From IMG/VR virus record IMGVR_UViG_3300032242_002041, positions 62,001 through 126,000 of that record: a DNA stretch of 64,000 nucleotides. One strand, 5' to 3'. The notes beneath the pieces were generated by a model, which had not been told where the DNA came from, did no database searches, and saw only the letters and a list, made by a program, of their open reading frames with translations. Each line of letters starts with the position of its first letter. Positions within the stretch are counted from its first letter, which is position 1. Of the stretch, positions 3,193 through 54,809 are shown in pieces. A program made the position numbers and the translations under genes.

Positions 3193-3212
3193 TAAGAAAT
3201 CTCCTAATAATG

Positions 3213-3287: not shown

Positions 3288-3308
3288 TATGATAGGGAAA
3301 AGTAAAGA

Positions 3309-36421: not shown

Positions 36422-37364
36422 CAACTATTGCGTTATCTGCACAAACGATCGACTATGGAAGCTCACGGAATTGCTGTCATTTCTTAAAGAGAATCAGGGG
36501 CAGTCGATTATACTAGATATTAATCCAGAAGCCATTGATCTTGAAAAGATCGGACTGTATAAAATACTAGATTTATTTGATTTTGAGTCAGTAATAATTT
36601 TTACATATAACCCGTTCGAGTGTCATAACAAGTACACTATAGTTTGTAAAAACACAACTGTTTTTTTAGAAGAAGCGGCAGTAGTTGATCCTTTGCTGCA
36701 CCAATGGACCAAAGATAAAATATTTTTAACTATGTATCGTCGCCCTACTGCCGGTCGCCTTGGGTTAGCAGGTCATCTGTTTGCTAACCATAATGACATT
36801 AGTCATATACATTTTTCTGCTAGTACATCAACAGATGAGCTGGAACTTTACGAAATGAATAAGTTATTAACTTACGATTTACCTTCTATCATCGATGCTG
36901 GCAAAATGATTCCTAACATGCCGTTGGAACTTGCTAGCAGTCAGTACTATTCAAAATTTGGGCTCATGTCAAATTTTGATTCTGCTCTGAGAGAGTACTA
37001 TCGACAAATATTAATTGATATTGTTGGAGAAACACATGTGTCAGGAGATACCTTTTTTCCTACAGAAAAAACCACAAGACCCATGTGGCTTAAAAAACCA
37101 TTTATAGTATTTGCTTCTAAAAACTATCTTGATTACCTACGGCAGATGGGGTTCAGAACATTTAGTGATTTTTGGCCCGAGGATTATGATGGATTTGACG
37201 GACGAGATCGTTACATTAAAATACTAGAGTTAATTGACAACTTAGCTCAAAAATCAATTGATGAACTAGAAAAAATGTACTGGGACATGCAATACACACT
37301 TGATCATAATTATAATCTTTTATTGAATCAAAACTACAACACTACCATTAGCTATCTACTATGA
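36414..37364 (+). CDS. Putative glycosyltransferase (GT10-like TEK motif), paralog 1
   Basis: DIVGET..FFPTEKTTRP..KKPFIV..LRQMGFRTF..EDYD..R. Confidence 0.5.
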   Translation: MTNNYCVICTNDRLWKLTELLSFLKENQGQSIILDINPEAIDLEKIGLYKILDLFDFESVIIFTYNPFECHNKYTIVCKNTTVFLEEAAVVDPLLHQWTKDKIFLTMYRRPTAGRLGLAGHLFANHNDISHIHFSASTSTDELELYEMNKLLTYDLPSIIDAGKMIPNMPLELASSQYYSKFGLMSNFDSALREYYRQILIDIVGETHVSGDTFFPTEKTTRPMWLKKPFIVFASKNYLDYLRQMGFRTFSDFWPEDYDGFDGRDRYIKILELIDNLAQKSIDELEKMYWDMQYTLDHNYNLLLNQNYNTTISYLL

Positions 37365-38776
37365 CAAACAAAGGCGACGAAGTCACACAGGATTTTAAAT
37401 CAAAGTTCTTAGGTGATGCAGAATTTATGAAGGAGAATCTCGGTCCAGCACTCTGCTTGGCCAAATGGAAGCAAGTTAGTCTACACTTGCCCACAGGACT
37501 TAATAACAGTTGCTATCATCCTCCCTTACATCCAATCGATGCTACCCTATTAGCAGACAATCCCAGCGCACTGCATAATACTCCGCACAAGAAAGAACAG
37601 CGTAAAATTATGCTCAAACAAGAACGCCCTGCAGAGTGTAGTTACTGCTGGGCTATGGAAGACAATAATAAACTAAGTGATCGTCACTACCGTTCTGGCG
37701 AGCCATGGGCTGCTAAAGACTTTAATATTGTTGTAAATTCAATAGGAGATGAAGATGTTATACCTAGCTATGTGGAAGTTAATTTTAATCATGCTTGTAA
37801 CTTGGCTTGTAGTTATTGTAGTCCTCAATTCAGTAGCACATGGCAGCAAGAGGTCACTAAATGGGGAGGGTATCCTACTAGTACTATTCATAACGATCCT
37901 AGTCATTTCCGTGGTCGTAATTTACCGATTCCTAACTCACAGCCTAATCCTTATGTAGATGCATTTTGGGAGTGGTGGCCTACCTTATACCCAGAATTAG
38001 AACACTTCCGTATGACCGGTGGCGAACCCATGTTGGACCGGAATACCTATAGAGTATTTGACTATGTGCTGGCCAATCCTAAACCCAACTTACATCTTAA
38101 TGTAACTAGTAACTTCAGTGTGGATGAAAAGACCTGGCAAAAGTATTTAGGCTACACAAAAGAATTATGCCAAGAAGGTCGTCTTGAACACTTTATGCAA
38201 TATATTAGTCTTGATTCATTTGGTCCACAAGCAGAATATATCCGCTACGGCTTAGACTTTGACCTACTATGGGATCGCGTTAATCAATTCCTTACAGAAG
38301 TTCCTAGTTACAATAGTGTGACGTTTATTGTCACTATGAATAATTTGAGCGTAACAGGCCTGCCTAACTTGATGGCTGGTATCTTAGGCCTACGTAAGCT
38401 GTACTCAACAACATACCAACGTGTATGGTTTGATACTCCTGTACTACGTCAGCCCGCATGGCAGAGCTTGCAGATACTACCGGAAAGCTATGCTGAACAG
38501 TTAGAATACTTGTGGGCCTGGATGCTACGTCAAATTGAAACAGAAGACACACGCTTCCAAGGATTCAAGGACTATGAAATAGCCAGACTTGACCGCGATA
38601 TTGCCTGGATGCGTGATGGACAGACGCTAGATCCTGCGTATATTAATCAATGTAAAGCAGACTTCTTTCGTTTCTTTAACGAAGCTGATCGCAGGCACGG
38701 TACAGATTTTCTTGCAACCTTTCCAGAAATGACTACCTGGTGGAAGGAGTGCGAATATCATGCTAGGCAGTCGTAA
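37361..38776 (+). CDS. Radical SAM protein with N-terminal twitch-like domain
   Basis: CLAKW..SCYHP..CSYCW; CNLACSYC; TGGEP. Confidence 0.9.
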   Translation: MTNKGDEVTQDFKSKFLGDAEFMKENLGPALCLAKWKQVSLHLPTGLNNSCYHPPLHPIDATLLADNPSALHNTPHKKEQRKIMLKQERPAECSYCWAMEDNNKLSDRHYRSGEPWAAKDFNIVVNSIGDEDVIPSYVEVNFNHACNLACSYCSPQFSSTWQQEVTKWGGYPTSTIHNDPSHFRGRNLPIPNSQPNPYVDAFWEWWPTLYPELEHFRMTGGEPMLDRNTYRVFDYVLANPKPNLHLNVTSNFSVDEKTWQKYLGYTKELCQEGRLEHFMQYISLDSFGPQAEYIRYGLDFDLLWDRVNQFLTEVPSYNSVTFIVTMNNLSVTGLPNLMAGILGLRKLYSTTYQRVWFDTPVLRQPAWQSLQILPESYAEQLEYLWAWMLRQIETEDTRFQGFKDYEIARLDRDIAWMRDGQTLDPAYINQCKADFFRFFNEADRRHGTDFLATFPEMTTWWKECEYHARQS

Positions 38777-39842
38777 GTTAATTGTAGACACACACAGTGA
38801 AATTTACAGCATGATTCGTAATTGTGCTGATGGTATATTTTGGAATCTGGAACAGCATATTCAAAAAAATGAACTGGTGCCTGATGCAATTTATGTAATT
38901 GGTCGAGAACAAACACGCCTGTATAACAAACAACTGCGTACACTGATTGAAACCGCTGGCATAAAAGTTATCTTTAGTAATCCACACGAAGGGTCTGAAA
39001 CTTTAAAAAATCACTGTTATCAGTATGGCATTGCAGATTTGGTCTTGTCGGGTAAAATTTTATTAGTTGGTGGCGGTGATATGGAAAGCTTTTGGCCTCA
39101 TTTGCAGTATGATAGTTTTTTACCTAAAATTTTAAATTATGATGAAAATCTTTTGGCCATTGCAGATTACAAAGAAAAGTTTACAACACAACGTCCTTAT
39201 AAATTTTTGTTGCTGAATGGTCGAGCACGAGAACATAGAATACAACTGCTGGCTAAACTTGAAGGCATATTGGATCAAGCAATCTGGACCAATTTAGATT
39301 CTTCTGCTGGTCCTATACGACCGCTGGATCCAAGGTATGAATACAGCCATGTGATCAGCAACACACCACTGCCAGTTTCTGGATTTGTCAAACATCAGTT
39401 GTTTGATAACAAATGGGGCGATGTTTATATCAAACCAGAACTATATCAAGATACCTATTTTAGTATAGTTACCGAAACTGTGTTTGATTACCCGTACAGT
39501 TTTAGAACAGAAAAAATTTGGAAACCCATAGCAATTGGGCATCCTTGGATAGCAGTAGCCAACGCAGGCTTTTACAGAGACATGCACAATTTAGGATTTC
39601 AAACATTTAAAAACACAATCGATGAGTCATTTGATCAAATTGAAAACAATGCGGATCGTCTGGATCGCATCGCTCAAGTTGTTCTGGACTTATGTCAACA
39701 AGACCTTGTGACTTTTATAAAAGAGTGTTATAATGTATGTAAATACAATCAGCAACACCTTGCTGAACTAAGTCAAAAAGTTCCGCAAGAGTTCCCCAAC
39801 CGTTTTTTCCAATTTATTAAGAAATATCAATTCAATGAATGA
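38760..39842 (+). CDS. Putative glycosyltransferase (GT10-like TEK motif), paralog 2
   Basis: FLLLNGRAREHR; SIVTET..RTEKIWKP..HPWI..GFQTF..DESFD. Confidence 0.5.
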   Translation: MLGSRKLIVDTHSEIYSMIRNCADGIFWNLEQHIQKNELVPDAIYVIGREQTRLYNKQLRTLIETAGIKVIFSNPHEGSETLKNHCYQYGIADLVLSGKILLVGGGDMESFWPHLQYDSFLPKILNYDENLLAIADYKEKFTTQRPYKFLLLNGRAREHRIQLLAKLEGILDQAIWTNLDSSAGPIRPLDPRYEYSHVISNTPLPVSGFVKHQLFDNKWGDVYIKPELYQDTYFSIVTETVFDYPYSFRTEKIWKPIAIGHPWIAVANAGFYRDMHNLGFQTFKNTIDESFDQIENNADRLDRIAQVVLDLCQQDLVTFIKECYNVCKYNQQHLAELSQKVPQEFPNRFFQFIKKYQFNE

Positions 39843-41172
39843 CTTAGAGTTTCGTAAGCAGGTTCTTGACACTAAAAGTGCCAGCTTTTGTGCGGCCAAA
39901 TGGTACAATGCAACTATTTGGCTAGGTAGTGGTATGACTACAAGCTGTCATCATCCACCTGCACACAAGATTGATCTAGAGGAAATTAAAACTCGTCCTA
40001 GTGCTATACACAACACAGTAGAAAAGAAGATAGATCGACTAAACATGCAGTTAGGCAATCGTCCCAGAGGTTGTGAGTATTGTTGGAAGATCGAAGACAT
40101 GGGTCGCGATGCCATTAGCGACCGTGTATATAAAAGTAAAATTTACCCTATAGAGGCTTTAGATGAAGCAAATAACACCCCACACCAAGCGGACATCAAT
40201 CTTCGTACACTTGAAATCGCATTCGATCGCACTTGCCAATTTGCTTGTAGCTATTGTAACCCTGCTTTCAGTAGTACATGGGTTCGAGACATACAACGCA
40301 ACGGCCCCTATGAGCGTCTGGTGTCTGATGGGCGTAATCACTTTACTCACAGTCACGATAGTGCTCAACTATACCGGTTTGGTGAAGTTAATCCATATAG
40401 CGAAGCGTTCTTTAAGTGGTGGGAAACAGACCTACACAAGACTCTTCAAGAACTAAGAATCACCGGTGGTGAGCCGTTAATGAGCGGTGAAACGTGGAAG
40501 CTGATTGATTGGTTTAAAAATAATCCTGGACGTAGTCAAACACGCTTGGCTATTAATAGTAATCTAGGCAACGAAGTTGATGTAGATAGATTACTAGACG
40601 CAACTCAAAATATTAGTTTAGATTTGTATACCAGTATGGAAAGTGTTGGCCAACCAGCAGAGTATATCCGTGATGGCTTGAACTATTCAGCTTGGGTTAT
40701 GAACATGATCAAGTTGATGGATAGTAAGCGTCTGCGTGGCCTGCACGTTATGTGTACTATTAATGCATTATGCTTAGATACACTTCCAAAACTGCTGACA
40801 GTGTTCATGCGCTGGAAACACCAGTACGGACCGGACTTTCCTAATTTTACTTTAAATATTTTAAGGTTTCCTAGTTTTCAAAGCCCGCTAGTTTTACCAG
40901 ATGATATGCGTACACGTCACAAAGAACAATTGCAAGCCTGGCTTGACACCAATACTACCGATCCTATGTTACAAGAGCACGAACGCAACCATGTACAACG
41001 CCTGATTGATTATTTAGACGTAGTTAAAACTCCGCACAGTGATGCTTTTGAAATGCCCAAGCTACACAACGATTTTAAACAATTTTATCAACAATATGAT
41101 CAACGTCGTGGCAAGAACTTTACACAAACATTCTCTAACTTAGCAAAGTGGTATGACTCAATACAAATATAA
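39835..41172 (+). CDS. Radical SAM protein with N-terminal twitch-like domain
   Basis: CAAKW..SCHHP..CEYCW; CQFACSYC; TGGEP. Confidence 0.9.
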   Translation: MNDLEFRKQVLDTKSASFCAAKWYNATIWLGSGMTTSCHHPPAHKIDLEEIKTRPSAIHNTVEKKIDRLNMQLGNRPRGCEYCWKIEDMGRDAISDRVYKSKIYPIEALDEANNTPHQADINLRTLEIAFDRTCQFACSYCNPAFSSTWVRDIQRNGPYERLVSDGRNHFTHSHDSAQLYRFGEVNPYSEAFFKWWETDLHKTLQELRITGGEPLMSGETWKLIDWFKNNPGRSQTRLAINSNLGNEVDVDRLLDATQNISLDLYTSMESVGQPAEYIRDGLNYSAWVMNMIKLMDSKRLRGLHVMCTINALCLDTLPKLLTVFMRWKHQYGPDFPNFTLNILRFPSFQSPLVLPDDMRTRHKEQLQAWLDTNTTDPMLQEHERNHVQRLIDYLDVVKTPHSDAFEMPKLHNDFKQFYQQYDQRRGKNFTQTFSNLAKWYDSIQI

Positions 41173-42412
41173 CTCCGCCGATCTAGTACAGCCTGTAGAG
41201 CTGACAGAACGTGAAGAATTCTTATTAAAAGATTCAAAAACGTTTTGCATCTATCCATGGATACACTTACACGCTTACCCAACAGGCGAAGCATATCCTT
41301 GCTGTCATGCTGAAATGGCATACCCTGTGGGCAATGCTCGTTATAAAACACTAGAAGAAATTTATCGTGACGCACCTATGCGCAGCCTACGTGATGATAT
41401 GTTAAACGAGCGTCCTAATCCTGCTTGTGGTCGTTGCTATGAGCAAGAAGAGTCTGGATTTTTTAGTGGCCGCCGATCGGCCAACAAGCACCACGGGCAT
41501 CATATCAAGCGCATCGATGATGACAAATTTCAAATGAGCTACTGGGACATACGCTTCAGTAACCTGTGTAACCTAAGTTGTCGTAGCTGTGGACATATAT
41601 TCAGTTCAAGCTGGTATCAGGATCAGGCCAAATTAGCCGGTGGCACATGGAAGGAACAGAATCAGGCATTAAACTATGCCGGACGCACAGAAACAGACAT
41701 GTGGGAACAGTTGATTCCGCACTTGGACTATGTAGAACAAATATATTTTGCTGGCGGCGAGCCATTAATGATGAAAGAGCACTATAATATTTTAGATGAA
41801 CTAGAACGTAGAGGTCGCTTTGATGTGCGTTTAATTTACAATACTAACTTTACACAAACTAAGTTAAAAGATCGCACAGTGTTTGATTATTGGAAGAAGT
41901 TTAAAAGTGTAGCGGTTGGCGCAAGTTTAGACGATCAACACGGTCGTGCTGAATATATTCGCCGCGGCACAGAATGGCATAAAGTACTAGCTAATCGTGC
42001 TGAAATGATTCGTACTTGTCCAAATGTAGATTTTTATATAAGCCCTACATTAAGTATAATGAATGCTTGGAGTCTGACAGATTTTCATCGCCAGTGGACC
42101 GAAACAGGGCTAATACGGGCACAGGATCTTAATGTAAATATTCTTCAGGACCCAGCATACTATAGAATAGATATTGCCACACCGGATTATAAACAAAAAC
42201 TAATTGCTCGTTATCAAGAGCATCTTGAATGGTTACGTCCGCAAGACCCCTTACAACGTGCAACAGTGGGATTTGAAAGTGCTATTAATTTTTTACAAAC
42301 CACAGATAATACTGCACTGCTACCAAAGTTTTGGGCAAAGACGCACGAACTTGATGCAATACGTAACGAGAACATACTAGAAGTAATACCCGAATTGAAA
42401 GAATTACTATGA
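41153..42412 (+). CDS. Radical SAM protein with N-terminal twitch-like domain
   Basis: CIYPW..YPCC..CGRC; CNLSCRSC; AGGEP. Confidence 0.9.
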   Translation: MTQYKYNSADLVQPVELTEREEFLLKDSKTFCIYPWIHLHAYPTGEAYPCCHAEMAYPVGNARYKTLEEIYRDAPMRSLRDDMLNERPNPACGRCYEQEESGFFSGRRSANKHHGHHIKRIDDDKFQMSYWDIRFSNLCNLSCRSCGHIFSSSWYQDQAKLAGGTWKEQNQALNYAGRTETDMWEQLIPHLDYVEQIYFAGGEPLMMKEHYNILDELERRGRFDVRLIYNTNFTQTKLKDRTVFDYWKKFKSVAVGASLDDQHGRAEYIRRGTEWHKVLANRAEMIRTCPNVDFYISPTLSIMNAWSLTDFHRQWTETGLIRAQDLNVNILQDPAYYRIDIATPDYKQKLIARYQEHLEWLRPQDPLQRATVGFESAINFLQTTDNTALLPKFWAKTHELDAIRNENILEVIPELKELL

Positions 42413-45944: not shown

Positions 45945-46033
45945 AAAATATTATCAATCGTATTAAGTTAGAAATTCGTTATCGTAAAAAATTAAAAAAA
46001 ATGTACGACGAAGATCCTTTTATTTACTTTTAA
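45932..46033 (+). CDS. 33-aa basic peptide, copy 1; absent from the ORF track
   Basis: MSWIKNIINRIKLEIRYRKKLKKMYDEDPFIYF*; fills the gap; paralog at 46555. Confidence 0.75.
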   Translation: MSWIKNIINRIKLEIRYRKKLKKMYDEDPFIYF

Positions 46034-46034
46034 T

Positions 46035-46568: not shown

Positions 46569-46656
46569 AAATATTTACAATCGTATTACACTTGAAATTC
46601 GTTATCGCAAAAAGTTAAAAGAATTGCGCAAAAGAGATCCCTTTATCTACAAATGA
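46555..46656 (+). CDS. 33-aa basic peptide, copy 2; absent from the ORF track
   Basis: MSWIKNIYNRITLEIRYRKKLKELRKRDPFIYK*; ATGA overlap with the carbamoyltransferase start. Confidence 0.8.
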   Translation: MSWIKNIYNRITLEIRYRKKLKELRKRDPFIYK

Positions 46657-48107: not shown

Positions 48108-48886
48108 TGAATAAAAATATTATATTTTGTGGAGATAGTTTTGCCGCCAGTTATAAGGAAGTCGGTGTGTGTTTTTATTATCCTGGTTGCCAAAATAATC
48201 CACTCAATAATAATCAAGACCGCGGTCGCGGTCCAATCAAGTGGTCCATAGCGCACCCTAGTCAAGTAGCCAGCCACTATGGATATAATTTGTATAATTT
48301 TGCATATGGTGGTAAAAGTTGGTGGTACAGTAGATGTGTAATGTTTAATTATTTGCGTGATTTTCCGGAGCTACTGGAAAATACTCAAGCCATGGTATTC
48401 TTTCATACTGACTCGCACCGTTTAAATATCAGTTCAAAATTTGAGTCTGACAACAACACCTGGAAGACCGTACAGAAATTGTGGAAAATGGATCTAATAG
48501 ACGAGGATTTTCAACCTTGGGCTCAAATGCAATGGTTTAAAGAAATTGATCAACATTTCGGTTCAGTACCTAGCATACATTTTCACTGTTTTCCAGAAAC
48601 TGTACAATACGATTCTTTTTTGCCAGGTATGAGGTTTACTACACCATTGATACACTTATCTGTAGGCGAACTCACTGGATCTGATTCAGAAATAAGTACC
48701 CAATTAAGTGACAACGAAACTCGTGTCAATCATTTAAATGCACACAATAACCAAGCATTAGCTGATGTAATTATCAATGCGTTAGATAACTATCAACCGG
48801 GTAGTTATCCTATAGACACTTCAAAGTTTGATCTGATCAATCCCAATGCCAGTAAATGGCCCACACTGGGTTATGGAACTAAGTAA
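48107..48886 (+). CDS. SGNH/GDSL-like protein (possible esterase or acyltransferase)
   Basis: FCGDSFA, N.AYGGKS and NHLN motifs. Confidence 0.55.
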   Translation: MNKNIIFCGDSFAASYKEVGVCFYYPGCQNNPLNNNQDRGRGPIKWSIAHPSQVASHYGYNLYNFAYGGKSWWYSRCVMFNYLRDFPELLENTQAMVFFHTDSHRLNISSKFESDNNTWKTVQKLWKMDLIDEDFQPWAQMQWFKEIDQHFGSVPSIHFHCFPETVQYDSFLPGMRFTTPLIHLSVGELTGSDSEISTQLSDNETRVNHLNAHNNQALADVIINALDNYQPGSYPIDTSKFDLINPNASKWPTLGYGTK

Positions 48887-48891
48887 ACATA

Positions 48892-50178
48892 ATGAATCCA
48901 CCAATATTTCCAATACAAACAGAAACAGGGTGTCTGCTTAAATGGGCCTGGAGTACTATATATCTAGGGCAGGGCAAGACAGCAAGTTGTCATAGAGTTG
49001 ATCAACATACAATAGATCCCAATAATGTTGGTAATTTTCATAATCAACCTGAAAAGATACTGGCCAGAGAATTAATGCTCGACGGTAAATGGCCTGGCAA
49101 AGGATGCGAATACTGTAAAAAAATTGAAGATGCCGGCGGCATGAGCGATCGTATATATCAGCTAGAACAAGTTGAAAACAATAAAAATTATGAAATAATT
49201 CCCAAGGCATTGGTAAACAATCCACAGGCCACTCATGTGGTTCCTACCATATTAGAGATATACTTTAACAATACTTGCAACATGAGCTGTTTATATTGTG
49301 GCAGTCATTTTAGCTCCAAGTGGGAAGAAGAAAATCGTCGATTTGGGGAATATCGTAGTGAACGCTTGCGCTTTGGCTACAACTTGGCACAGAATCCCAA
49401 TTATGAACAAATGCTAGCCGACTTCTGGACCTGGTTAGCAAAAGACAATAATTATTTACATATTAGACAATATCAAATAGCCGGAGGTGAACCCTTTTAT
49501 CAGAAAGAATTTGATCAGAGCATTGAATTTTGGGAACAGCATCCCAATCCTGATCTTACTTTCAATATGATAACTAATCTTAAAGTGGCACCCAAAAAGT
49601 TTCGCAGCTACATAGACAAGTTTGGTGACATGGTTCGCGATGGAAAGCTAAGGAAATTACAAATCAGCAGCAGCTTAGACTGCTGGGGCCCCGAACAAGA
49701 ATATGTGCGTTGGGGATTAGATCTCAGTGAATGGCAGGAAAATTTTGAATATCTATTAGATAAACCCTGGGTGCAACAGTGCATCAACAGTGCTGTTAGC
49801 GCACTTACTATAAAGACACTGCCAGAGTTAATTAAAAATATAATACAATGGAATAGTCAGGCAGAAGGAATAAAAAAAATATACTATAGTTTTATGAGTA
49901 TCATGTATCCTAAACAAATGGATCCTGCTATATTTGGCGCTGGCGTGTTTGACGATGACTTTGCACTGGTATTAGAATTAATGGATCAAATTCCTAATCC
50001 TTCGCCTGCTGATCGGTCCAGTAGAGCACACATGCAAGGTATAGCACAACAAATAGCACAAGCACCTAGAGATGTAAACAGCATTGAGTGTTTACAAGAA
50101 TATCTTACTGAACTAGATCGTCGCCGCGATACCAATTGGCGCGAGTTATTTCCCTGGTTAGATCGAGACTGGCGCTAA
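48892..50178 (+). CDS. Radical SAM protein with N-terminal twitch-like domain
   Basis: CLLKW..SCHR..CEYC; CNMSCLYC; AGGEP. Confidence 0.9.
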   Translation: MNPPIFPIQTETGCLLKWAWSTIYLGQGKTASCHRVDQHTIDPNNVGNFHNQPEKILARELMLDGKWPGKGCEYCKKIEDAGGMSDRIYQLEQVENNKNYEIIPKALVNNPQATHVVPTILEIYFNNTCNMSCLYCGSHFSSKWEEENRRFGEYRSERLRFGYNLAQNPNYEQMLADFWTWLAKDNNYLHIRQYQIAGGEPFYQKEFDQSIEFWEQHPNPDLTFNMITNLKVAPKKFRSYIDKFGDMVRDGKLRKLQISSSLDCWGPEQEYVRWGLDLSEWQENFEYLLDKPWVQQCINSAVSALTIKTLPELIKNIIQWNSQAEGIKKIYYSFMSIMYPKQMDPAIFGAGVFDDDFALVLELMDQIPNPSPADRSSRAHMQGIAQQIAQAPRDVNSIECLQEYLTELDRRRDTNWRELFPWLDRDWR

Positions 50179-51458
50179 AACCAAGGTGCCCATTCTGGCA
50201 CTACTTCAACTAGTGGTTTTTTACTCACTGAATCTTCCTTGCGAATGTGTCTAACAAATTGAGGTATAAACTCTGGACAATGCTCTGTGTATTCTATAAC
50301 ACTAATATAGCGATCAACTAATTCTCTATAATAGTTATCGTAAATAGTATCTGCAGAAAATCTAAGGCGCCCATTGGCAAGTCTTGATAACGCTAATTGT
50401 CTTAGTTCTGGTGGCAATGCGCCCACGCCTAAATGATCTACTCTAAACACCGGACTCACGTTAATATAACTACGCGGTAAATGTATAGGATAAGTGGGTC
50501 CAATTTTATTATCATATGCCCAATTAATAAAATCCATAATACTAGTAGCATTAATGGCAGACAATACGTAGTTAATAACTGTAGATATGCTAGGATGAAA
50601 CATCAGCTCTAAACTGTTGGCCTCAACGTCAGACCATCGACATCCTCTACGCTGATACTCTATAACTGATTCAGTGCCATCGATACTGACATTGTATATT
50701 ACTTGTTTAAAATGTTTGAACTTGTCCATCAGCTCGTTGGCACTGCTGCTAGCATTGGTCAGCAAAGTTATCATGATGTTTTTAGCTAGATCTTTTTCAA
50801 TCAAGTAATCCATTATTTTATGAACTTGTTTTTGTAGCGCAGTTTCGCCACCGGTAAAGTTAATAATTTCCACACGATCCAACACTGAATAAAAATCTGG
50901 GTCTGTAGGATTTAACACTATTTTTTCTTTACGTCCTAATACCTGAACTTCAAAGGTCTGTCGCTGACTACTGGCACCTCCGGCACACATAACACAACTA
51001 TAATTACAGTAATTACTTGGATAGTAATCTAAAGTAAGTATATCTTTAACTGTGTTATTATTGGAAACAATTTCTTGAACCTCTTTAACAATATCTACAC
51101 TAAGAAATTCACTGTAAAATTTGTTGTTCATTTGTCTAGGACTGGTTGCGCCCGCCTGTTCGTTGCGAGAACAACTTGCACAATCGGATATTTGTTCCAA
51201 TTGACCGTCGATCATGGCCTGACGTATACTGCGCCAATTTTCACTGTTTCTAGAATCTACAACACTGTTATTAATTACATCCCATTTATTGCGATTATTG
51301 CTCATCACAATACTACAAGGACGAACACTGTTAGGCAGGCTATCCACAGATGTAGGAACTACATTATTAGTTTGATAGAAAGCTCCGAAGAATGGGTACA
51401 AGCATATTTTTTCTCCTAGCTCGTTATATATGTGATCAAGTTGATTAATTGGATTCAT
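50175..51458 (-). CDS. Radical SAM protein with N-terminal twitch-like domain (start 51458 or 51482)
   Basis: CLYPF..RPCS..CASC; CNYSCVMC; TGGET; SIDG. Confidence 0.88.
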   Translation of the reverse strand: MNPINQLDHIYNELGEKICLYPFFGAFYQTNNVVPTSVDSLPNSVRPCSIVMSNNRNKWDVINNSVVDSRNSENWRSIRQAMIDGQLEQISDCASCSRNEQAGATSPRQMNNKFYSEFLSVDIVKEVQEIVSNNNTVKDILTLDYYPSNYCNYSCVMCAGGASSQRQTFEVQVLGRKEKIVLNPTDPDFYSVLDRVEIINFTGGETALQKQVHKIMDYLIEKDLAKNIMITLLTNASSSANELMDKFKHFKQVIYNVSIDGTESVIEYQRRGCRWSDVEANSLELMFHPSISTVINYVLSAINATSIMDFINWAYDNKIGPTYPIHLPRSYINVSPVFRVDHLGVGALPPELRQLALSRLANGRLRFSADTIYDNYYRELVDRYISVIEYTEHCPEFIPQFVRHIRKEDSVSKKPLVEVVPEWAPWF

Positions 51459-52545
51459 GGCATATTTCTTTAAGACTTGCATTGTATATTATGTTTAAGC
51501 CTTGGCTAGTTACACGATTATATACTTGTTTTAGTTCAGCTATGGCTTGTTGGTGTTCAGGGTGAGCAGAGTTGCCCACAACATCGTGATTTAAATAGTC
51601 ATCCCAGGTTCCCCAATCTTCTAATCTATTAATAATACCTTGAAATCCATAGTGTGTACATAAATCAACAAATTGTTGTTGATCATTCCAATTGCCTTTT
51701 TGCAAGACAAATTTAAGTAACACATGTGCATTAGTCTGTCGAACTAGGTCCTGCAAAAAATCTAAATTTTTAATTAATTGATCAAAGCGACCCGGTTGTC
51801 GCACTTGTTCGTATACGTCGGCTGACCCGGCATCTATACTAATATAATATTGTGTAATATTGTTAACAATAGAATTGTTGTCCAATTGCTTGGATAATAA
51901 TAATCCATTGGTAAACAAACGCAAACTATGATTACTTTTGGGCTGATAGTTATGTAATAATGGACGCATAATGTTGCTGGCCAGTGGATCACCGTTGCCC
52001 GTCATTATTATGTGTGTAGGAGCATCAAATTTTTCTAATAACTCAATCACGTGATTTACCATGGCCAATCGACGGTCGTAATCAGCTCCAGAATTAGACA
52101 TGATCGGATGAGCCCTACAACTAGGACAAGCTAAATTGCAACTGTCGTCAATATTGATACTAATATAGTAGCAACGATAACTTTTGTCTATAGTCTTACT
52201 AGGACTGACAGCAGCATAATTGTTGGTCAATCGATCAGAATTTAATATTCCACAACGATCTACCGCACAATGAGTAAACTTGCGATCATCAATATCTTTT
52301 TGTAAACTACGAGCTACAGGACTAAGCCAAATGTCTTCTAGTCTAGAAAAGTTCATGATATTGCCCACTGACATGGGTAACCAAGCTTCGCATGCACAGA
52401 CAAAACATTCGCCTTTTCGGTCAATGACTAGGGTATATGATGGAAAATCACAGTGATTGGTAATGTTGAGTTTTAAATCTTTATTACGTGGTATATTAGT
52501 ATAACTGTGTTGATTGTCAATGGGAATTATTGGGTATGTATACAT
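51445..52545 (-). CDS. Radical SAM protein, divergent subtype with N-terminal Cys domain
   Basis: CDFP..CFVCAC..HCAVDRC; CNLACPSC; GNGDPL; FTNG; SIDAG. Confidence 0.88.
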   Translation of the reverse strand: MYTYPIIPIDNQHSYTNIPRNKDLKLNITNHCDFPSYTLVIDRKGECFVCACEAWLPMSVGNIMNFSRLEDIWLSPVARSLQKDIDDRKFTHCAVDRCGILNSDRLTNNYAAVSPSKTIDKSYRCYYISINIDDSCNLACPSCRAHPIMSNSGADYDRRLAMVNHVIELLEKFDAPTHIIMTGNGDPLASNIMRPLLHNYQPKSNHSLRLFTNGLLLSKQLDNNSIVNNITQYYISIDAGSADVYEQVRQPGRFDQLIKNLDFLQDLVRQTNAHVLLKFVLQKGNWNDQQQFVDLCTHYGFQGIINRLEDWGTWDDYLNHDVVGNSAHPEHQQAIAELKQVYNRVTSQGLNIIYNASLKEICHESN

Positions 52546-52551
52546 GGCAAC

Positions 52552-52557
52552 TATTTA
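52552..52557 (-). promoter_or_regulatory. Late-type TAAATA box
   Basis: Intergenic, 6 nt before ATG 52545. Confidence 0.5.
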
Positions 52558-52581
52558 TTGACCTGTTGTGCTCTTGGACAT

Positions 52582-53607
52582 TTACAAGTAGCTTTCTAGG
52601 CCGCCGCGACGACGTAAATCTTGTGTGCAGCAGGATATGCCACCATCCCAAAAGTAACTATGCCGTAGTTCTGAAATAATAGGATTAATCCTGTGCTTTT
52701 TACAAAAATCAAATACATCTTTGTTGTAGGCACTAAAGATTACATTTTCTTCATCTAGTACTAAGCAGTTAACATCAAATACTGTTTCAGCAACAAAGCC
52801 GGTCCACTTATTTAGATATGTGTCTACAAAGTTAGTAAACTCTGCGGTAGGTGTTTGCCCTTGAACATACCAGGCTCCTGGATTTGATTCCCACTTAAAC
52901 TTGCCCACTTCCATGGCAGCCCAAATACTACTATCCCAAATTTTCATTACATCCCAGCCGGGAAAGTCTTCAGCTAAATGCAAGTGCATATCATGTTTAC
53001 TACTTAAGATAACACCAGGCTTGAGAATGGCAAACACAGCATCACCATGCCCATCGGTTACAGCTTCGTGTATGCGATACTCGGGCCCCAAACAGTTTTC
53101 TACTATCCATTGTGTTTGCTCTGGTCTTAGGTAATCACTGTTATCAAAGAATACATCACGTCCTACACGCACGATACAACTAGCACTGGCACCATTCAAA
53201 ATACAATTTTCGTCCCAGTGTTTGCCGTGTGGATTAACAACTTGATCCGCATAGTTGGCACAGATGTCATTTAACTCGTCCATTGGCAAAACACGTAATA
53301 GTTTTTGCCCTAGGCTAATTTGCCAATCTCTAGGTGTAAGCGGGGGTAGTGGTGCTCCTTGCCCATTTATTTGTGCCTTTTGAAATTGATCTTTGTCAAT
53401 AAGTGTAGGACGACAAACTTTGGCCCCATACTGCTCGATAGTCTGTTGTAAATTGTTTAAATCTTCTTCGGTTTCTGACAATATTTGCTGTAATTGATTA
53501 CGCACTTGTGCGTCGTCGATAAAGTCAAAATAATCAGGGCTATATGCTCGCCCTACTATAACTTCTTCAAGTGGTTGCCAGGATGTATAACTATTAATCA
53601 TTGTCAT
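52582..53607 (-). CDS. Amidinotransferase (glycine/inosamine-phosphate amidinotransferase family)
   Basis: NSYTSWQPLEEVIVG, PRD, GHGD, DVN and GGISCCTQDLRR with the catalytic Cys. Confidence 0.85.
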   Translation of the reverse strand: MTMINSYTSWQPLEEVIVGRAYSPDYFDFIDDAQVRNQLQQILSETEEDLNNLQQTIEQYGAKVCRPTLIDKDQFQKAQINGQGAPLPPLTPRDWQISLGQKLLRVLPMDELNDICANYADQVVNPHGKHWDENCILNGASASCIVRVGRDVFFDNSDYLRPEQTQWIVENCLGPEYRIHEAVTDGHGDAVFAILKPGVILSSKHDMHLHLAEDFPGWDVMKIWDSSIWAAMEVGKFKWESNPGAWYVQGQTPTAEFTNFVDTYLNKWTGFVAETVFDVNCLVLDEENVIFSAYNKDVFDFCKKHRINPIISELRHSYFWDGGISCCTQDLRRRGGLESYL

Positions 53608-53657
53608 TCTTTCTTTGTACGATATTTAAACTAAAATTATGTTGGGAGTATTTTTTA

Positions 53658-54809
53658 TCATCGCATGCTAGGATTAAAAATCTTGTCATAGTTTGTGCCT
53701 CTTGACTGATCTAAAGCAGACACATATTCTCTAAATTGTCGAAATAACTCGTTACTAAACACAGTATTTTTTAAATTCAAAACAGCAGACTTTACAGAGT
53801 CTGAAATATACGTATTATTTTTGGCCCATAAAATAAATCTATCTAAATCTTCTGGAGGAATAGATTCAGGAACAAGACATTGATTTCCTTGTACATAGGT
53901 CAAAGTCAACTCCATGCTATTTTTTTCACACCAATCTATCAGTGGAGGAAGAGAGTATGCGCTGGTATGCTGTAGCACATGATGAACACGATTTAACCGT
54001 ATGTTGGTAGTGTTTTTAATACGCTGAATATTATTTTCAATTTCTGCCCAGCAACTTGGATATCTTAGATAATCATTCATTGCTCCTGTTCCTTCTAAAC
54101 TTATAATCAAGTCTAAATTTTCAAATGGTTCTAGTTTAGCTATTAACCGGTTTGGAATCTTGCTAAAGTTGGTAGTACTCTGAAGAGTAACATCAGTGCG
54201 ATTTAAATTAACTAATTCGTCAAGTAAATTTAAAGTGCCTGGCATGGTCAATGGCTCGCCACCTGACAGATTTATTCTACGGGCTGTAGCCAAATGTGGA
54301 CGTATAAATTTTAAAAATTCAGGATCTTCCCAGGTATTGGCAACTGGCGCAACCAGTGTATGCTCTTTTATTGCAGTTACATTTTTAAATATATCTTGGT
54401 GTTTAACTAGCTCAGTATACCAGGTTGAACTGGCTGAGCTAGAACACATTATACAAGCAAGATTACAATGGGTTCCCATTCTGAATTCTAAATCATAGGT
54501 ATCAAACGAATCATTATTGTAGCCATCTCGATTGTTGGAAACGTTTCTCAGACTAGTATATCCAATATTTTCTTCATTCCAGCAATGAGAACATTCTTTA
54601 ACTCTATTTCCTTGTACAAGTTCGTTGATTAATTTGGGCTTAAATTCAGTCTGATATCGATCAAACTCTTGCCAACTTATTGAGGATTCATAATATGTTT
54701 TGTACTGGCAACATGGTGATAATGATTTACCGTCATGAGATATAGCCAGCCCATGATTAATTAAAGAACAAGTTATTTTTTCAGATTGAGTCATTGATTT
54801 AAAATTCAC
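53658..54809 (-). CDS. Radical SAM protein with N-terminal twitch-like domain
   Basis: CSLI..SPCC..CSHCW; CNLACIMC; SGGEP. Confidence 0.9.
   Translation of the reverse strand: MNFKSMTQSEKITCSLINHGLAISHDGKSLSPCCQYKTYYESSISWQEFDRYQTEFKPKLINELVQGNRVKECSHCWNEENIGYTSLRNVSNNRDGYNNDSFDTYDLEFRMGTHCNLACIMCSSSASSTWYTELVKHQDIFKNVTAIKEHTLVAPVANTWEDPEFLKFIRPHLATARRINLSGGEPLTMPGTLNLLDELVNLNRTDVTLQSTTNFSKIPNRLIAKLEPFENLDLIISLEGTGAMNDYLRYPSCWAEIENNIQRIKNTTNIRLNRVHHVLQHTSAYSLPPLIDWCEKNSMELTLTYVQGNQCLVPESIPPEDLDRFILWAKNNTYISDSVKSAVLNLKNTVFSNELFRQFREYVSALDQSRGTNYDKIFNPSMR

What the first reader, a model, noticed from the sequence alone, without database searches (positions are those of the whole stretch)
37361..54809. 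Expansion of radical SAM paralogs with the auxiliary Fe-S domain at the N-terminus
Seen: all nine island enzymes, plus the one at 1-1222, place a Cys domain (C..PW/KW, C(C/H), CxxC) before an intact CxxxCxxC and a GGE(P)-type motif. They fall into at least three subtypes: CxxKW..SC(x)H (37361, 39835, 48892), CxxP(W/F)..CC-like (41153, 42409, 43613, 50175, 53658, 1-1222) and a GDP-type (51445). Known: SPASM/twitch domains are normally C-terminal. From memory, an N-terminal-twitch family of unknown function has been defined mostly from uncultured sources. Inference: these are divergent, maintained paralogs acting on different positions or substrates, and this phage context points to sugar chemistry for the family.
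Basis: partly seen in the sequence, partly recalled or inferred. Interest (0 to 1): 0.8.

Follow-up and report, generated by a model that had tools for sequence, protein, structure and literature searches.

The report
Twitch-first radical SAM set in phage
An uncultured giant phage carries ten divergent radical SAM enzymes whose extra iron-sulfur domain sits at the front rather than the back; five are kept in fixed order across the whole phage lineage among sugar-building genes, which makes glycan tailoring the best guess for this uncharacterised enzyme family.

Summary
All ten ORFs have an N-terminal four-Cys domain, then CX3CX2C and GGE. Nine score 216-380 bits on NCBIfam NF033640, "twitch domain-containing radical SAM protein" (cut-off 170). 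The tenth (51445-52545) has the same layout but is a different subfamily.

- **Old paralogues:** they are 13-31% identical and do not form one clade.
- **Conserved core:** five of them (37361, 39835, 41153, 42409, 43613) are orthologous groups in fixed order in about 80 related viral contigs. Every copy keeps CX3CX2C; 93-100% keep the N-terminal Cys pattern.
- **Phage context:** the neighbours are three GT-B-fold glycosyltransferase-like proteins, NDP-sugar epimerase/dehydratases, a UDP-glucose-dehydrogenase-like protein, a DegT aminotransferase, an amidinotransferase and an O-carbamoyltransferase.
- **Bacterial context:** homologues are also multi-copy, and the annotated loci look like polysaccharide loci.
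- **The 33-aa peptides:** they are strongly conserved, but look more like a carbamoyltransferase-associated small protein (PFIY motif, as in DUF5989) than a RiPP precursor.

Best reading: each paralogue performs one radical tailoring step on a phage-made sugar or glycan. Family membership, conservation and context are shown. Substrate and chemistry are inferred. The family is already catalogued but has no characterised member.

The parts
2..1222 (-). R10. Outlying N_Twi radical SAM paralogue, 36 kb from the island. Its C-terminus runs off the window, and it has a 128-aa N-terminal extension.
   Evidence: NF033640 272 bits. C132..C150/151..C191xxC194, then C238x3Cx2C.
34719..35627 (+). NAD-dependent NDP-sugar epimerase/dehydratase (Epi1). 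Accessory: not present in most relatives.
   Evidence: Pfam Epimerase 2.9e-33; synteny.
35618..36421 (+). Short UDP-glucose/GDP-mannose dehydrogenase-like protein (267 aa). Accessory.
   Evidence: Pfam UDPG_MGDP_dh central domain 3.7e-20 and N-terminal domain 2.8e-17.
36414..37364 (+). T316. GT-B glycosyltransferase-like protein of the X360/U363 family.
   Evidence: hmmsearch against the U363 profile, E 3e-34.
37361..38776 (+). R1. Core N_Twi radical SAM paralogue, KW..SCxH subtype.
   Evidence: NF033640 296 bits. 46 unique orthologues at 60-87% identity, all with CX3CX2C.
38760..39842 (+). X360. Core GT-B glycosyltransferase-like protein.
   Evidence: hhalign to the U363 family, 99.6% probability. 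U363 fold. Conserved position.
39835..41172 (+). R2. Core N_Twi radical SAM paralogue, KW..SCxH subtype.
   Evidence: NF033640 291 bits. 59 orthologues, all motifs intact.
41153..42412 (+). R3. Core N_Twi radical SAM paralogue. Best match to the family model; structure modelled.
   Evidence: NF033640 380 bits. Pfam SPASM at 32-96 before Radical_SAM at 134-260. AF2 pLDDT 93.3. Closest solved folds are anSME and BlsE.
42409..43626 (+). R4. Core N_Twi radical SAM paralogue.
   Evidence: NF033640 329 bits. Pfam SPASM at 9-77 and Radical_SAM at 119-279.
43613..44908 (+). R5. Core N_Twi radical SAM paralogue.
   Evidence: NF033640 285 bits. 59 orthologues at 61-80% identity.
44889..45944 (+). Y351. 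Core protein of unknown fold, always between R5 and the 33-aa peptide. Many invariant His, Cys, Glu and Asp residues.
   Evidence: Synteny; alignment A3. No hit in Pfam, PHROGs, PDB sequences or the Atlas.
45932..46033 (+). pepA. Divergent second copy of the 33-aa peptide.
46035..46568 (+). Z177. Accessory protein of unknown function lying between the two peptide copies.
   Evidence: Found in the same arrangement in only one other locus, L082.
46555..46656 (+). pepB. Core 33-aa peptide, consensus MxWIKNLxNRIxLEIRYRKKLKELRKRDPFIYK. Its stop overlaps the start of the carbamoyltransferase gene.
   Evidence: Present in nearly all related loci, with the C-terminal 21 aa almost invariant. Its PFIY C-terminus and N-terminus resemble DUF5989, which sits next to bacterial carbamoyltransferases. 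The homology is not statistically established.
46653..48107 (+). O-carbamoyltransferase of the NodU/CmcH/TobZ type. Core.
   Evidence: Pfam Carbam_trans_C 7e-49 and Carbam_trans_N 1e-31. Conserved position.
48107..48886 (+). V259. Accessory protein of unknown function.
   Evidence: No hits.
48892..50178 (+). R6. Accessory N_Twi radical SAM paralogue, KW..SCxH subtype.
   Evidence: NF033640 231 bits. Present in a minority of relatives.
50175..51482 (-). R7. Accessory N_Twi radical SAM paralogue with a long hairpin loop.
   Evidence: NF033640 222 bits. C27..C56..C101xxC104.
51445..52545 (-). R8. Radical SAM enzyme with an N-terminal SPASM-like domain, but of a different subfamily (GNGDP, CX4C).
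   Evidence: Pfam SPASM at 32-98 and Radical_SAM at 134-276. NF033640 only 39.5 bits.
52582..53607 (-). Amidinotransferase (AGAT/StrB1/SxtG-like). Core.
   Evidence: phmmer against PDB: AGAT 5.5e-16, StrB1 4e-12, SxtG 1e-10. The HMMER alignment to AGAT covers the N-terminal, His-containing and C-terminal Cys-containing blocks, with a His and a Cys aligned. 63-88% identical across the lineage.
53658..54809 (-). R9. Accessory, very divergent N_Twi radical SAM paralogue.
   Evidence: NF033640 216 bits. Long branch on the tree.
54799..55890 (-). U363. Core GT-B-fold glycosyltransferase-like protein.
   Evidence: AF2 pLDDT 94.7. The listed top 50 PDB matches are GT-B-fold glycosyltransferases or close relatives, such as OtsA, SenB, VldE, BshA and FucT.
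55889..59086 (+). BIG1065. Core 1065-aa protein of unknown function flanking the module.
   Evidence: Synteny. No Pfam, PHROGs or PDB hit.
59043..60128 (-). DegT/DnrJ/EryC1 sugar aminotransferase. Core.
   Evidence: Pfam 4.8e-55; synteny.
60082..61071 (-). NDP-sugar epimerase/4,6-dehydratase (Epi2). Core.
   Evidence: Pfam Epimerase 1e-44 and GDP_Man_Dehyd 1e-35; synteny.

Best explanation
**What the proteins are.** The ten ORFs are working radical SAM enzymes of the 'twitch-first' family, NCBIfam NF033640. Each has three parts:
- an N-terminal domain of about 100 aa carrying the first four Cys of the SPASM/twitch motif (CX12-13GX4C...CX2C), expected to hold one fully ligated auxiliary [4Fe-4S] cluster;
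- a partial TIM barrel with CX3CX2C and GGE, which binds and cleaves SAM;
- a C-terminal helical bundle that probably forms the substrate pocket.

**How they are organised.** Five paralogues (R1-R5) form an ancient gene set in fixed order, shared by an abundant uncultured jumbo-myovirus lineage. Their genes overlap with genes for GT-B glycosyltransferase-like proteins, an O-carbamoyltransferase with its small PFIY peptide, an amidinotransferase, a DegT aminotransferase and NDP-sugar dehydratase/epimerases. R6-R10 are accessory copies that come and go between relatives.

**Most likely mechanism (inferred).** The phage builds an unusual amino-, guanidino- or carbamoyl-bearing sugar or oligosaccharide during infection. 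Each paralogue abstracts a hydrogen from a different sugar carbon or a different intermediate. The auxiliary cluster then accepts the electron, as proposed for BtrN. The outcome would be an oxidation, epimerisation, deoxygenation or C-C linkage. The product probably decorates the virion, since the genes lie just downstream of the baseplate and fibre genes, or else the host envelope.

**Shown:** family membership, motif conservation, fold, synteny and gene context. **Inferred:** cluster binding, substrate, reaction type and the destination of the product.
For: **Family and motifs.** NF033640 scores are 216-380 bits for nine of the ten proteins. Pfam places SPASM before Radical_SAM. The Cys are invariant across 56 phage and bacterial sequences, and each paralogue carries the motifs.

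**Fold.** The R3 model has pLDDT 93.3. A beta-hairpin lies between the first two Cys, followed by the barrel and a helical bundle. The nearest solved folds are anSME, BlsE, SkfB, SuiB, viperin and MoaA.

**Conservation.** The order S305-R1-X360-R2-R3-R4-R5-Y351-pep33-carbamoyltransferase ... amidinotransferase-GT-like-U363-BIG1065-DegT-Epi2 recurs in about 80 IMG/VR loci. Every one of the 44-59 unique orthologues per group keeps CX3CX2C, and 93-100% keep the N-terminal Cys pattern.

**Sugar context in the phage.**
- U363 has a GT-B fold.
- T316 and X360 are homologous to U363.
- The carbamoyltransferase, DegT and the epimerases have strong Pfam matches.
- The amidinotransferase aligns to AGAT with a His and a Cys conserved in the matched blocks.

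**Sugar context in bacteria.**
- An Acidobacteriota locus has the family interleaved with GT2, GT4, GT9-methyltransferase and YdjC genes.
- A Bacteroidota locus has the order rSAM, carbamoyltransferase, DUF5989, SxtJ-like, followed by GT4, epimerase, UGD and GNT-I, with an ABC transporter upstream.
- Of 36 bacterial loci of 18 kb or more, 16 carry homologues of the window's own sugar or carbamoyl enzymes.

**Precedent.** The twitch enzymes BtrN and BlsE act on sugars (PMC9012708).
Against: - No member of NF033640 has been characterised, so no reaction can be transferred by homology.
- The similarity to BlsE is marginal by sequence (E 0.034), and the structural matches cover only the barrel (TM 0.3-0.45).
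- Most characterised SPASM enzymes modify peptides. A highly conserved 33-aa peptide sits inside the module.
- One bacterial array (L163) sits next to Asp/Arg hydroxylase-like genes with no glycosyltransferase in view.
- Vibrio phage K566 has four paralogues but no U363-type glycosyltransferase nearby.
- The GT-B assignment of U363 rests on weak Foldseek E-values (2e-3 and above), and no Pfam family matches.
- The bacterial co-occurrence counts have no background control.
- Y351, S305 and BIG1065 remain unexplained.
Confidence: 0.5

Rival explanations
1. The enzymes mature a peptide or protein, as RiPP enzymes do. The radical SAM set would act on the conserved 33-aa peptide, making cross-links or a peptide-derived cofactor as in PQQ or mycofactocin. 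Alternatively it would act on a virion structural protein encoded just upstream.
For: - Most characterised SPASM and twitch enzymes act on peptides (PMC9012708).
- The top structural matches include anSME, SkfB, SuiB and CteB.
- pep33 lies inside the core module. Its last 21 residues are almost invariant, while neighbouring proteins are only 60-70% identical. It carries conserved Trp, Tyr and Phe residues.
- The island directly follows baseplate and fibre genes and a 4454-aa ORF.
- A Bdellovibrionia array lies beside two Asp/Arg-hydroxylase-like genes.
Against: - No PqqD/RRE domain was detected in any paralogue. The modelled C-terminal region is all helical.
- BLAST found no pep33 homologue in the bacterial loci that hold the family.
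- Where small PFIY proteins do occur in bacteria, they are DUF5989 proteins sitting next to the carbamoyltransferase, not the radical SAM genes.
- In the phage, the pep33 stop overlaps the carbamoyltransferase start.
- Five or more maturases for one 33-aa peptide with no Cys would be unusual.
Confidence: 0.18
2. The module makes a diffusible small molecule, an aminoglycoside-like or guanidino-sugar compound, rather than a surface glycan. The phage would use it against the host or against competing phages.
For: - The gene set mirrors aminoglycoside tailoring. It has a DegT aminotransferase, a StrB1-like amidinotransferase, a TobZ/NodU-type carbamoyltransferase, twitch radical SAMs (BtrN is one) and GT-B proteins whose fold matches include the pseudo-glycosyltransferase VldE.
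- SxtG, the SxtJ-like protein and the DUF5989-type small protein echo the accessory genes of the saxitoxin cluster. That DUF5989 corresponds to the small saxitoxin protein SxtK is from my memory and was not tested.
Against: - No cyclitol synthase and no export or resistance gene was recognised in the island.
- The bacterial contexts look like polysaccharide loci, with several glycosyltransferases and an ABC transporter.
- The module is placed with virion genes.
Confidence: 0.12
3. The enzymes modify nucleotides or the phage DNA as a hypermodification pathway, with the sugar and amidino or carbamoyl groups ending up on bases.
For: - Viperin, QueE and MoaA, which act on nucleotides, are among the weak sequence and fold matches.
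- From general knowledge, phages are known to glycosylate and hypermodify DNA.
Against: - No hydroxymethylase, DNA glycosylase-type transferase (DpdA-like) or base-kinase genes appear in the module.
- The module sits with tail genes, not replication genes, apart from R10.
- The bacterial homologues sit in polysaccharide loci.
Confidence: 0.06
4. The paralogues are decaying duplicates or selfish filler with no maintained function.
For: - The accessory copies R6-R10 vary between relatives.
- R9 sits on a very long branch.
Against: - R1-R5 are kept in order in about 80 contigs at 58-88% identity. Every copy keeps CX3CX2C and 93-100% keep the N-terminal Cys pattern.
- All ten ORFs in the window are intact, with complete motifs.
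Confidence: 0.02

Closest known systems
NCBIfam NF033640, N_Twi_rSAM ('twitch domain-containing radical SAM protein')
   Same: Nine of the ten ORFs match end to end above the curated cut-off. They have the same domain order and the same Cys pattern.
   Different: The family is only a bioinformatic definition. The literature library held no characterised member and no mention of the accession. What this work adds is the fixed five-paralogue phage module, the link to glycan genes, and the finding that 51445-52545 is a separate subfamily with the same layout.
BtrN, a twitch radical SAM dehydrogenase that acts on 2-deoxy-scyllo-inosamine
   Same: One auxiliary cluster site with four Cys taken from the first half of the SPASM motif: one Cys before the hairpin, one after it, and a CX2C after the helix. 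It has a carbohydrate-type substrate, and its auxiliary cluster is proposed to accept an electron (PMC6231123; PMC9012708).
   Different: In BtrN the twitch domain follows the barrel; here it precedes it. There is no detectable sequence match to BtrN, and the C-terminal helical bundle (residues 344-418 of R3) has no counterpart.
anSME (SPASM) and BlsE (twitch, cytosylglucuronate decarboxylase)
   Same: These are the best structural matches to the R3 model (E 2.5e-5 and 3.3e-5). BlsE is also the only PDB sequence match to R4 (E 0.034) and acts on a sugar nucleoside.
   Different: TM-scores are only 0.35-0.45, over roughly the 250 aligned columns of the match. anSME binds two auxiliary clusters and acts on a protein. 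Domain order differs.
Radical SAM/SPASM RiPP maturases (SkfB, SuiB, CteB, PqqE, MftC)
   Same: Same superfamily and auxiliary-cluster motif. A small conserved peptide gene lies in the module.
   Different: No RRE/PqqD domain. The auxiliary domain is N-terminal. The peptide resembles a carbamoyltransferase-associated small protein and has no detectable counterpart in the bacterial loci.
Marine T4-like environmental viral genome with 12 radical SAM genes (Nishimura et al. 2017, PMC5332604)
   Same: An earlier report that some large uncultured phages carry a dozen radical SAM genes.
   Different: That paper discusses them as consumers of Fe-S clusters. It does not describe an N-terminal twitch domain, orthologous sets or a glycan context. 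It is a 183-kb T4-like genome, whereas this window belongs to a lineage with contigs of 320-350 kb.
Carbamoyltransferase with DUF5989 and SxtJ accessory proteins; StrB1/SxtG amidinotransferases
   Same: The module's carbamoyltransferase, its adjacent PFIY peptide and its amidinotransferase match these tailoring enzymes.
   Different: pep33 lacks the hydrophobic middle segment of DUF5989, lies upstream rather than downstream of the carbamoyltransferase, and is not matched by the Pfam model.

Membership tests
NCBIfam NF033640 (N_Twi_rSAM) | Whole-protein HMM score at or above the curated cut-off of 170 bits | tested here: met
   Nine ORFs score 216-380 bits. The tenth, 51445-52545, scores 39.5 bits and is therefore not filed as a member.
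NCBIfam NF033640 (N_Twi_rSAM) | Twitch/SPASM-like Cys domain placed N-terminal to the radical SAM core | tested here: met
   Pfam SPASM lies at residues 8-98, ahead of Radical_SAM, in four ORFs. The four aligned Cys lie upstream of CX3CX2C in all ten.
Radical SAM superfamily | CX3CX2C cluster motif, GGE SAM-binding motif and partial TIM-barrel fold | tested here: met
   CX3CX2C in 10/10 and GGE in 9/10, with GNGD in R8. The R3 model matches the barrels of anSME, BlsE, viperin, PFL-AE and MoaA.
Radical SAM superfamily | Reductive cleavage of SAM to 5'-deoxyadenosine | not testable with these tools
   Needs anaerobic enzymology.
Twitch domain (truncated SPASM) | First four Cys of the motif CX9-15GX4C-gap-CX2C, flanking a beta-hairpin and a helix, with the CX5CX3C...C of the second cluster absent | tested here: met
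   The motif is as defined in PMC6231123. It is strict in R1-R4, R6 and R10. Variants: GX5C in R9, no Gly in R5, a long loop in R7 and CX4C in R8. The hairpin at 38-48 lies between C32 and C50 in the model. No further conserved Cys are present.
Twitch domain (truncated SPASM) | C-terminal extension of the radical SAM core | tested here: not met
   The domain is N-terminal. The literature describes SPASM and twitch domains as C-terminal extensions (PMC9012708). This is the feature that makes the family a variant.
Twitch domain (truncated SPASM) | Binds one auxiliary Fe-S cluster | not testable with these tools
Needs Fe/S analysis, EPR or Mossbauer spectroscopy.
Radical SAM/SPASM RiPP maturases | RRE (PqqD-like) leader-binding domain, or a separate PqqD partner | tested here: not met
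   Neither Pfam nor NCBIfam finds a PqqD/RRE domain in any paralogue or neighbour. The non-barrel regions of the model are the twitch domain and a helical bundle.
Radical SAM/SPASM RiPP maturases | Adjacent precursor peptide that co-occurs with the enzyme | tested here: inconclusive
   pep33 is conserved in the phage lineage, but BLAST found no counterpart next to bacterial family members. It resembles DUF5989, which is linked to carbamoyltransferases.
GT-B glycosyltransferases (for T316, X360 and U363) | Two-Rossmann-domain GT-B fold | tested here: met
   The U363 model has pLDDT 94.7. The listed top 50 PDB matches are GT-B-fold enzymes aligned over about 350 columns, but E-values are only 2e-3 to 7e-2. 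X360 and T316 are linked to U363 by profile comparison.
GT-B glycosyltransferases (for T316, X360 and U363) | Membership of a curated GT family (Pfam/CAZy) | tested here: not met
   No Pfam family matches family members or distant homologues. The GT10 lead from the Atlas scores 0.80 and remains only a lead.
Amidinotransferases (AGAT/StrB1/SxtG) | Sequence homology, with the His and the C-terminal Cys of the conserved AGAT blocks retained | tested here: met
   E 5.5e-16 to AGAT. The blocks 'GHGDAVF' and 'GGISCCT' align to 'MHIDATF' and 'GGFHCWT'. That these are the catalytic residues is from my memory of AGAT. Pfam itself gave no Amidinotransf hit.

The most novel reading that the evidence does not exclude
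A widespread lineage of uncultured jumbo phages encodes a radical 'assembly line'. Five or more twitch-first radical SAM enzymes would successively functionalise unactivated C-H bonds of one sugar or oligosaccharide scaffold. That scaffold would also be aminated, amidinated and carbamoylated, giving a glycan or aminoglycoside-like molecule with no known counterpart. This would make NF033640 the first large radical SAM family dedicated to glycan tailoring.
Probability: 0.3. Interest if true: 0.85.

Novelty: new variant of a known kind. Interest (0 to 1): 0.6.

Why it matters
- **An uncharacterised family gets a testable context.** SPASM and twitch enzymes are mined intensively, mostly as peptide maturases. 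A family with a permuted domain order and no characterised member now appears tied to carbohydrate genes. It has thousands of close relatives in metagenomes and reaches nine or ten copies per locus. If the sugar link holds, it opens a new area of radical glycan chemistry.
- **Ready-made ortholog sets.** The five groups R1-R5 are natural sets for assigning one reaction to each enzyme.
- **Phage biology.** An abundant jumbo-phage lineage would be devoting about 25 kb next to its tail genes to making an exotic glycoconjugate. That bears on host recognition, virion stability and defence evasion.
- **A side product.** The work also turned up a large GT-B-like family with no Pfam model (11,308 representative clusters) and a possible soluble relative of the DUF5989 (possibly SxtK-type) small proteins.

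Tried and rejected
- **Similarity to known phages.** Megablast of the island and tblastn of a structural protein found nothing. Only distant jumbo phages (Atu_ph07, Rak2-like) match the baseplate wedge, at 33-35% identity.
- **Genome scan query.** A three-sequence alignment worked.
- **Unknown neighbours.** Pfam, PHROGs, PDB-sequence and Atlas searches of X360, Y351, U363, S305, T316, V259, Z177 and BIG1065 were blank or gave only chance-level hits. Pfam on long distant homologues of U363 was also blank.
- **ATP-grasp reading of 52582-53607.** Rejected. It rested on a weak PylC_N hit. The protein is an amidinotransferase.
- **pep33 as DUF5989.** The Pfam model does not hit pep33, and hhalign aligns only PFIY at 18% probability. 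I keep this as a lead based on shared motifs and position, not as established homology.
- **GT2-radical SAM fusion.** The fusion protein in the Acidobacteriota locus is not a twitch-first protein, so I do not use it as a Rosetta-stone link.
- **A 33-aa ORF in a Bacteroidales locus.** It follows the tandem radical SAM genes but is unrelated to pep33.
- **T4-type late promoter.** TATAAATA does not occur in the window, so expression timing could not be inferred.
- **Expression.** No RNA run holding the region was found.
- **Failed look-ups.** Two bacterial context look-ups failed, probably because of start-codon choice.
- **Literature.** Searches for NF033640, DUF5989 and 'N-terminal SPASM' found nothing.

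Full report

Yes. ORF listing and translation recover the nine island ORFs and the partial ORF at the left edge. The latter is on the - strand, covers 2-1222, and loses its C-terminus to the window boundary.

The alignment of the ten proteins shows the following.
- An invariant first Cys.
- A second Cys 17-28 residues later.
- A CX2C about 40 residues further on (CX4C in 51445).
- Then CX3CX2C, and GGE(P) (GNGDP in 51445).

In six proteins the first pair fits the canonical SPASM/twitch spacing CX9-15GX4C, and none has the second-cluster Cys. The motif definition is from PMC6231123. Pfam places SPASM ahead of Radical_SAM in four of them.

NCBIfam NF033640, 'twitch domain-containing radical SAM protein', matches nine end to end at 216-380 bits against a cut-off of 170. 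The ORF at 51445-52545 reaches only 39.5 bits, so it is a separate subfamily with the same layout. A profile built here finds exactly ten such genes in the window.

Pairwise identity to the first protein is 13-31%. The 'P(W/F)..CC' group is a loose collection and not one clade.

**2. What genome is this?**

The window is 100% identical, over the fetched match, to IMG/VR contig IMGVR_UViG_3300032242_002041, which is 228 kb long.

It encodes an SbcD-like nuclease, a gp55-like late sigma factor, baseplate hub and wedge proteins and a 4454-aa ORF. The wedge protein is 33-35% identical to those of jumbo phages such as Atu_ph07 and the Rak2-like group. No catalogued phage is close.

Relatives are very common in metagenomes. 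R3 alone has more than 7,400 hits, the 120 best listed being 83-93% identical, and some lie on contigs of 300-350 kb. Several 'MAG' contigs (Haliscomenobacter EUL_031, Legionellales SP228, TMED41, MED606, MED657) carry the same phage synteny and are probably mis-binned phage DNA.

**3. Comparative anatomy**

I compared the ORFs of 80 IMG/VR loci with the window's genes. This shows a conserved core, in this order:

S305 - R1 (37361) - X360 - R2 (39835) - R3 (41153) - R4 (42409) - [variable insert] - R5 (43613) - Y351 - a 33-aa peptide - carbamoyltransferase - [variable block] - amidinotransferase(-) - X360-like(-) - U363(-) - BIG1065(+) - DegT(-) - Epi2(-).

- R1-R5 are orthologous groups at 58-88% identity. 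Each has 44-59 unique sequences. All retain CX3CX2C and 93-100% retain the N-terminal Cys pattern.
- R6-R9, R10, Epi1, the UGD-like gene, T316, V259 and Z177 are accessory.
- Most loci of about 21 kb hold five full-length paralogues; the range is 1-8.
- Genes in the + strand block overlap by a few bases, which suggests a single translationally coupled unit.

**4. Origin of the paralogues**

I built a maximum-likelihood tree of 56 phage and bacterial sequences.
- R1, R2 and R6 fall in a strongly supported phage-only clade.
- R3 nests with Bacteroidota sequences (95% SH-aLRT).
- R4 groups with Bdellovibrionota and Bacteroidota sequences.
- R5, R7 and R9 sit on long branches.

The set is therefore not the product of a recent burst inside the phage. 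It is a collection of old subfamilies, some shared with bacteria. The bacterial sample was biased by the search pattern (built from R3, R4 and R10), and long branches make deep placements unsafe.

**5. Structure**

AlphaFold2 on the 56-sequence alignment gives a confident R3 model, with pLDDT 93.3 and pTM 0.90. Its parts are:
- a beta-hairpin at residues 38-48, lying between C32 and C50/51;
- helices leading to C92xxC95;
- a beta/alpha barrel over roughly residues 130-300;
- an all-helical C-terminal bundle at 344-418.

Foldseek against the PDB returns anSME, BlsE, SkfB, GDGT-MAS, SuiB, CteB, viperin, NifB, PFL-AE, QueE and MoaA at E 2.5e-5 to 1e-3. TM-scores are only 0.3-0.45, over about 250 aligned columns. 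By this search, no solved structure matches the model over its whole length. Sequence search of the PDB gives only a marginal BlsE match, E 0.034.

The hairpin-plus-helix layout with four Cys is what is described for the fully ligated twitch site of BtrN (PMC6231123). In BtrN and the SPASM enzymes the domain is a C-terminal extension (PMC9012708). I could not read coordinates, so the clustering of the four Cys in space is untested.

**6. Neighbours**

Strong assignments:
- O-carbamoyltransferase at 46653-48107 (7e-49), DegT aminotransferase (5e-55) and two NDP-sugar epimerase/dehydratases.
- A short UDP-glucose-dehydrogenase-like protein.
- An amidinotransferase at 52582-53607. It matches AGAT at E 5.5e-16 and also StrB1, SxtG and HsvA. 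A His and a Cys align within the conserved AGAT blocks. The weak PylC_N hit from Pfam was misleading.

New assignments:
- U363 folds confidently (pLDDT 94.7). The listed top 50 PDB matches are GT-B-fold enzymes, including OtsA, SenB, VldE, BshA, MshA, SdgB and alpha-1,3-FucT. They align over the full length but with weak E-values of 2e-3 and above.
- X360 and T316 belong to the same family (hhalign 99.6%; hmmsearch 3e-34 and 6e-32).
- This family has 11,308 representative clusters and no Pfam model.

Y351, S305, V259, Z177 and BIG1065 remain unassigned.

**7. The 33-aa peptides**

The two copies, at 45932-46033 and 46555-46656, are paralogues. One copy is present in nearly every related locus, always between Y351 and the carbamoyltransferase. 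The consensus is MxWIKNLxNRIxLEIRYRKKLKELRKRDPFIYK, and the C-terminal 21 residues are almost invariant. So it is a real, strongly constrained gene product.

In bacterial loci that hold the family, the carbamoyltransferase is followed by a 49-aa DUF5989 protein, for example MDFLKDIWGFIKERKKYWL-[hydrophobic segment]-APFIYSLF, and then an SxtJ-like protein. pep33 shares three features with DUF5989:
- the N-terminal pattern M-[DN]-[FW]-[IL]-K-[DN]-[IL]-W...RKK;
- the invariant PFIY at the C-terminus;
- a position next to a carbamoyltransferase.

pep33 lacks the hydrophobic middle segment. The Pfam model does not detect it, and hhalign aligns only PFIY. I therefore treat this as a good lead, not a demonstrated homology. 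It lowers, but does not remove, the chance that pep33 is a radical SAM substrate.

**8. Bacterial contexts of the family**

Homologues at 28-40% identity occur on large contigs, and in one case a complete chromosome, of Bacteroidota, Bdellovibrionota, Acidobacteriota and Gemmatimonadota, with single examples assigned to Pseudomonadota and Bacillota. They are often multi-copy.

Contexts with Pfam annotation:
- An Acidobacteriota locus has four twitch-first radical SAMs interleaved with GT2, GT4, a GT9-methyltransferase fusion and YdjC.
- A Bacteroidota locus runs rSAM, carbamoyltransferase, DUF5989, SxtJ-like, and then GT4, epimerase, UGD and GNT-I. An ABC transporter, five PhyH dioxygenases and a methyltransferase lie upstream.
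- A Bacteroidales locus has four tandem copies beside a weak PMT_2-like GT-C protein.
- A Bdellovibrionia locus has nine full copies in 21 kb beside two Asp/Arg-hydroxylase-like genes, with no glycosyltransferase in view.

Of 36 bacterial loci of 18 kb or more, 16 carry BLAST-detectable homologues of the window's own epimerase, UGD, DegT or carbamoyltransferase. There is no background control for this count.

**9. Interpretation**

The evidence favours glycan or sugar tailoring, at roughly 0.5 confidence. The conserved phage core combines sugar activation and amination, amidino and carbamoyl transfer and GT-B proteins with five radical SAMs. Two independent bacterial lineages place the same family in polysaccharide loci. 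The two twitch enzymes closest in fold or logic, BlsE and BtrN, act on sugars.

By analogy with BtrN, each paralogue would abstract a hydrogen from a defined carbon, and the auxiliary cluster would take the second electron (PMC9012708). The fixed set of five then implies five distinct steps or positions. This step is inference.

The destination of the product is unknown. Its position downstream of the baseplate and fibre genes suggests virion decoration, and modification of the host envelope is equally possible.

Rivals: peptide or protein maturation (0.18), a diffusible aminoglycoside-like product (0.12), nucleotide or DNA modification (0.06) and decay (0.02).

**10. Novelty**

The family itself is already catalogued, so the domain order is not a discovery. 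The literature library held no characterised member and no discussion of it. One paper notes a marine T4-like genome with 12 radical SAM genes, without analysing them further (PMC5332604).

What is new here:
- the conserved five-gene orthologous set in an abundant jumbo-phage lineage;
- its consistent embedding in a glycan-type module with an amidinotransferase and a carbamoyltransferase;
- the parallel bacterial contexts;
- the reassessment of the 33-aa peptide.

I rate it a new variant of a known kind, with interest 0.6.

Noticed in passing
window 45932-46033 and 46555-46656: Two paralogous 33-aa ORFs flank a 177-aa ORF. One copy is conserved in nearly all related phage loci, with an almost invariant C-terminus ...LEIRYRKKLKELRKRDPFIYK. 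It resembles bacterial DUF5989 small proteins, which sit next to carbamoyltransferases, at both ends, but it lacks their hydrophobic middle segment.
   Followed up: yes
window 52582-53607 (-): Pfam gave only a weak PylC_N (ATP-grasp) hit. The protein is in fact a clear amidinotransferase homologue (AGAT, StrB1, SxtG, HsvA), with a His and a Cys aligned in the conserved AGAT blocks. It is 63-88% identical across the phage lineage.
   Followed up: yes
window 36414-37364, 38760-39842 and 54799-55890: Three paralogues of a large GT-B-fold family that has no Pfam model. A profile of U363 finds 11,308 representative clusters at 50% identity, and the Atlas clusters nearest to X360 are almost all viral.
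   Followed up: partly
window 15153-28517: A single 4454-aa ORF lies directly after the baseplate wedge gene. It is presumably a giant virion or fibre protein and was not analysed.
   Followed up: no
whole window: The T4 late-promoter core TATAAATA does not occur on either strand, against 6.5 +/- 2.2 expected from shuffles, even though a gp55-like late sigma factor is encoded at 2281-3372.
   Followed up: no
window 55889-55890: The - strand gene U363 and the + strand gene BIG1065 diverge with start codons that overlap by two bases. That leaves no intergenic space for promoters.
   Followed up: no
L084, L085, L086, L087, L088, L147, L149 (GTDB genome contigs): Contigs binned as Haliscomenobacter, Legionellales, Betaproteobacteria TMED41 and Rickettsiales MED606/MED657 MAGs carry the phage's tail-gene and radical SAM synteny. 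They are probably mis-binned jumbo-phage DNA.
   Followed up: partly
L163 (Bdellovibrionia contig, 21 kb): Nine full-length twitch-first radical SAM genes, plus partial ones, lie in 21 kb next to two Asp/Arg-hydroxylase-like genes. This bacterial expansion is as large as the phage's.
   Followed up: partly
L164 1134-3521: A 795-aa protein fuses a GT2 glycosyltransferase to a radical SAM domain, with a faint SPASM hit. It lies in the same Acidobacteriota locus as the twitch-first enzymes, but it is not itself a twitch-first protein.
   Followed up: partly
window 2-1222 (-), residues 9-52 of the protein: The N-terminal extension of R10 weakly matches the C-terminal helical region of the family profile (positions 326-364). 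This may be a remnant of a partial duplication or a fusion.
   Followed up: no
L166 (Vibrio phage K566, record positions about 161.5-168.3 kb): A cultured 255-kb Vibrio phage carries four clustered twitch-first radical SAM genes among hypothetical proteins. It could serve as an experimental system.
   Followed up: partly
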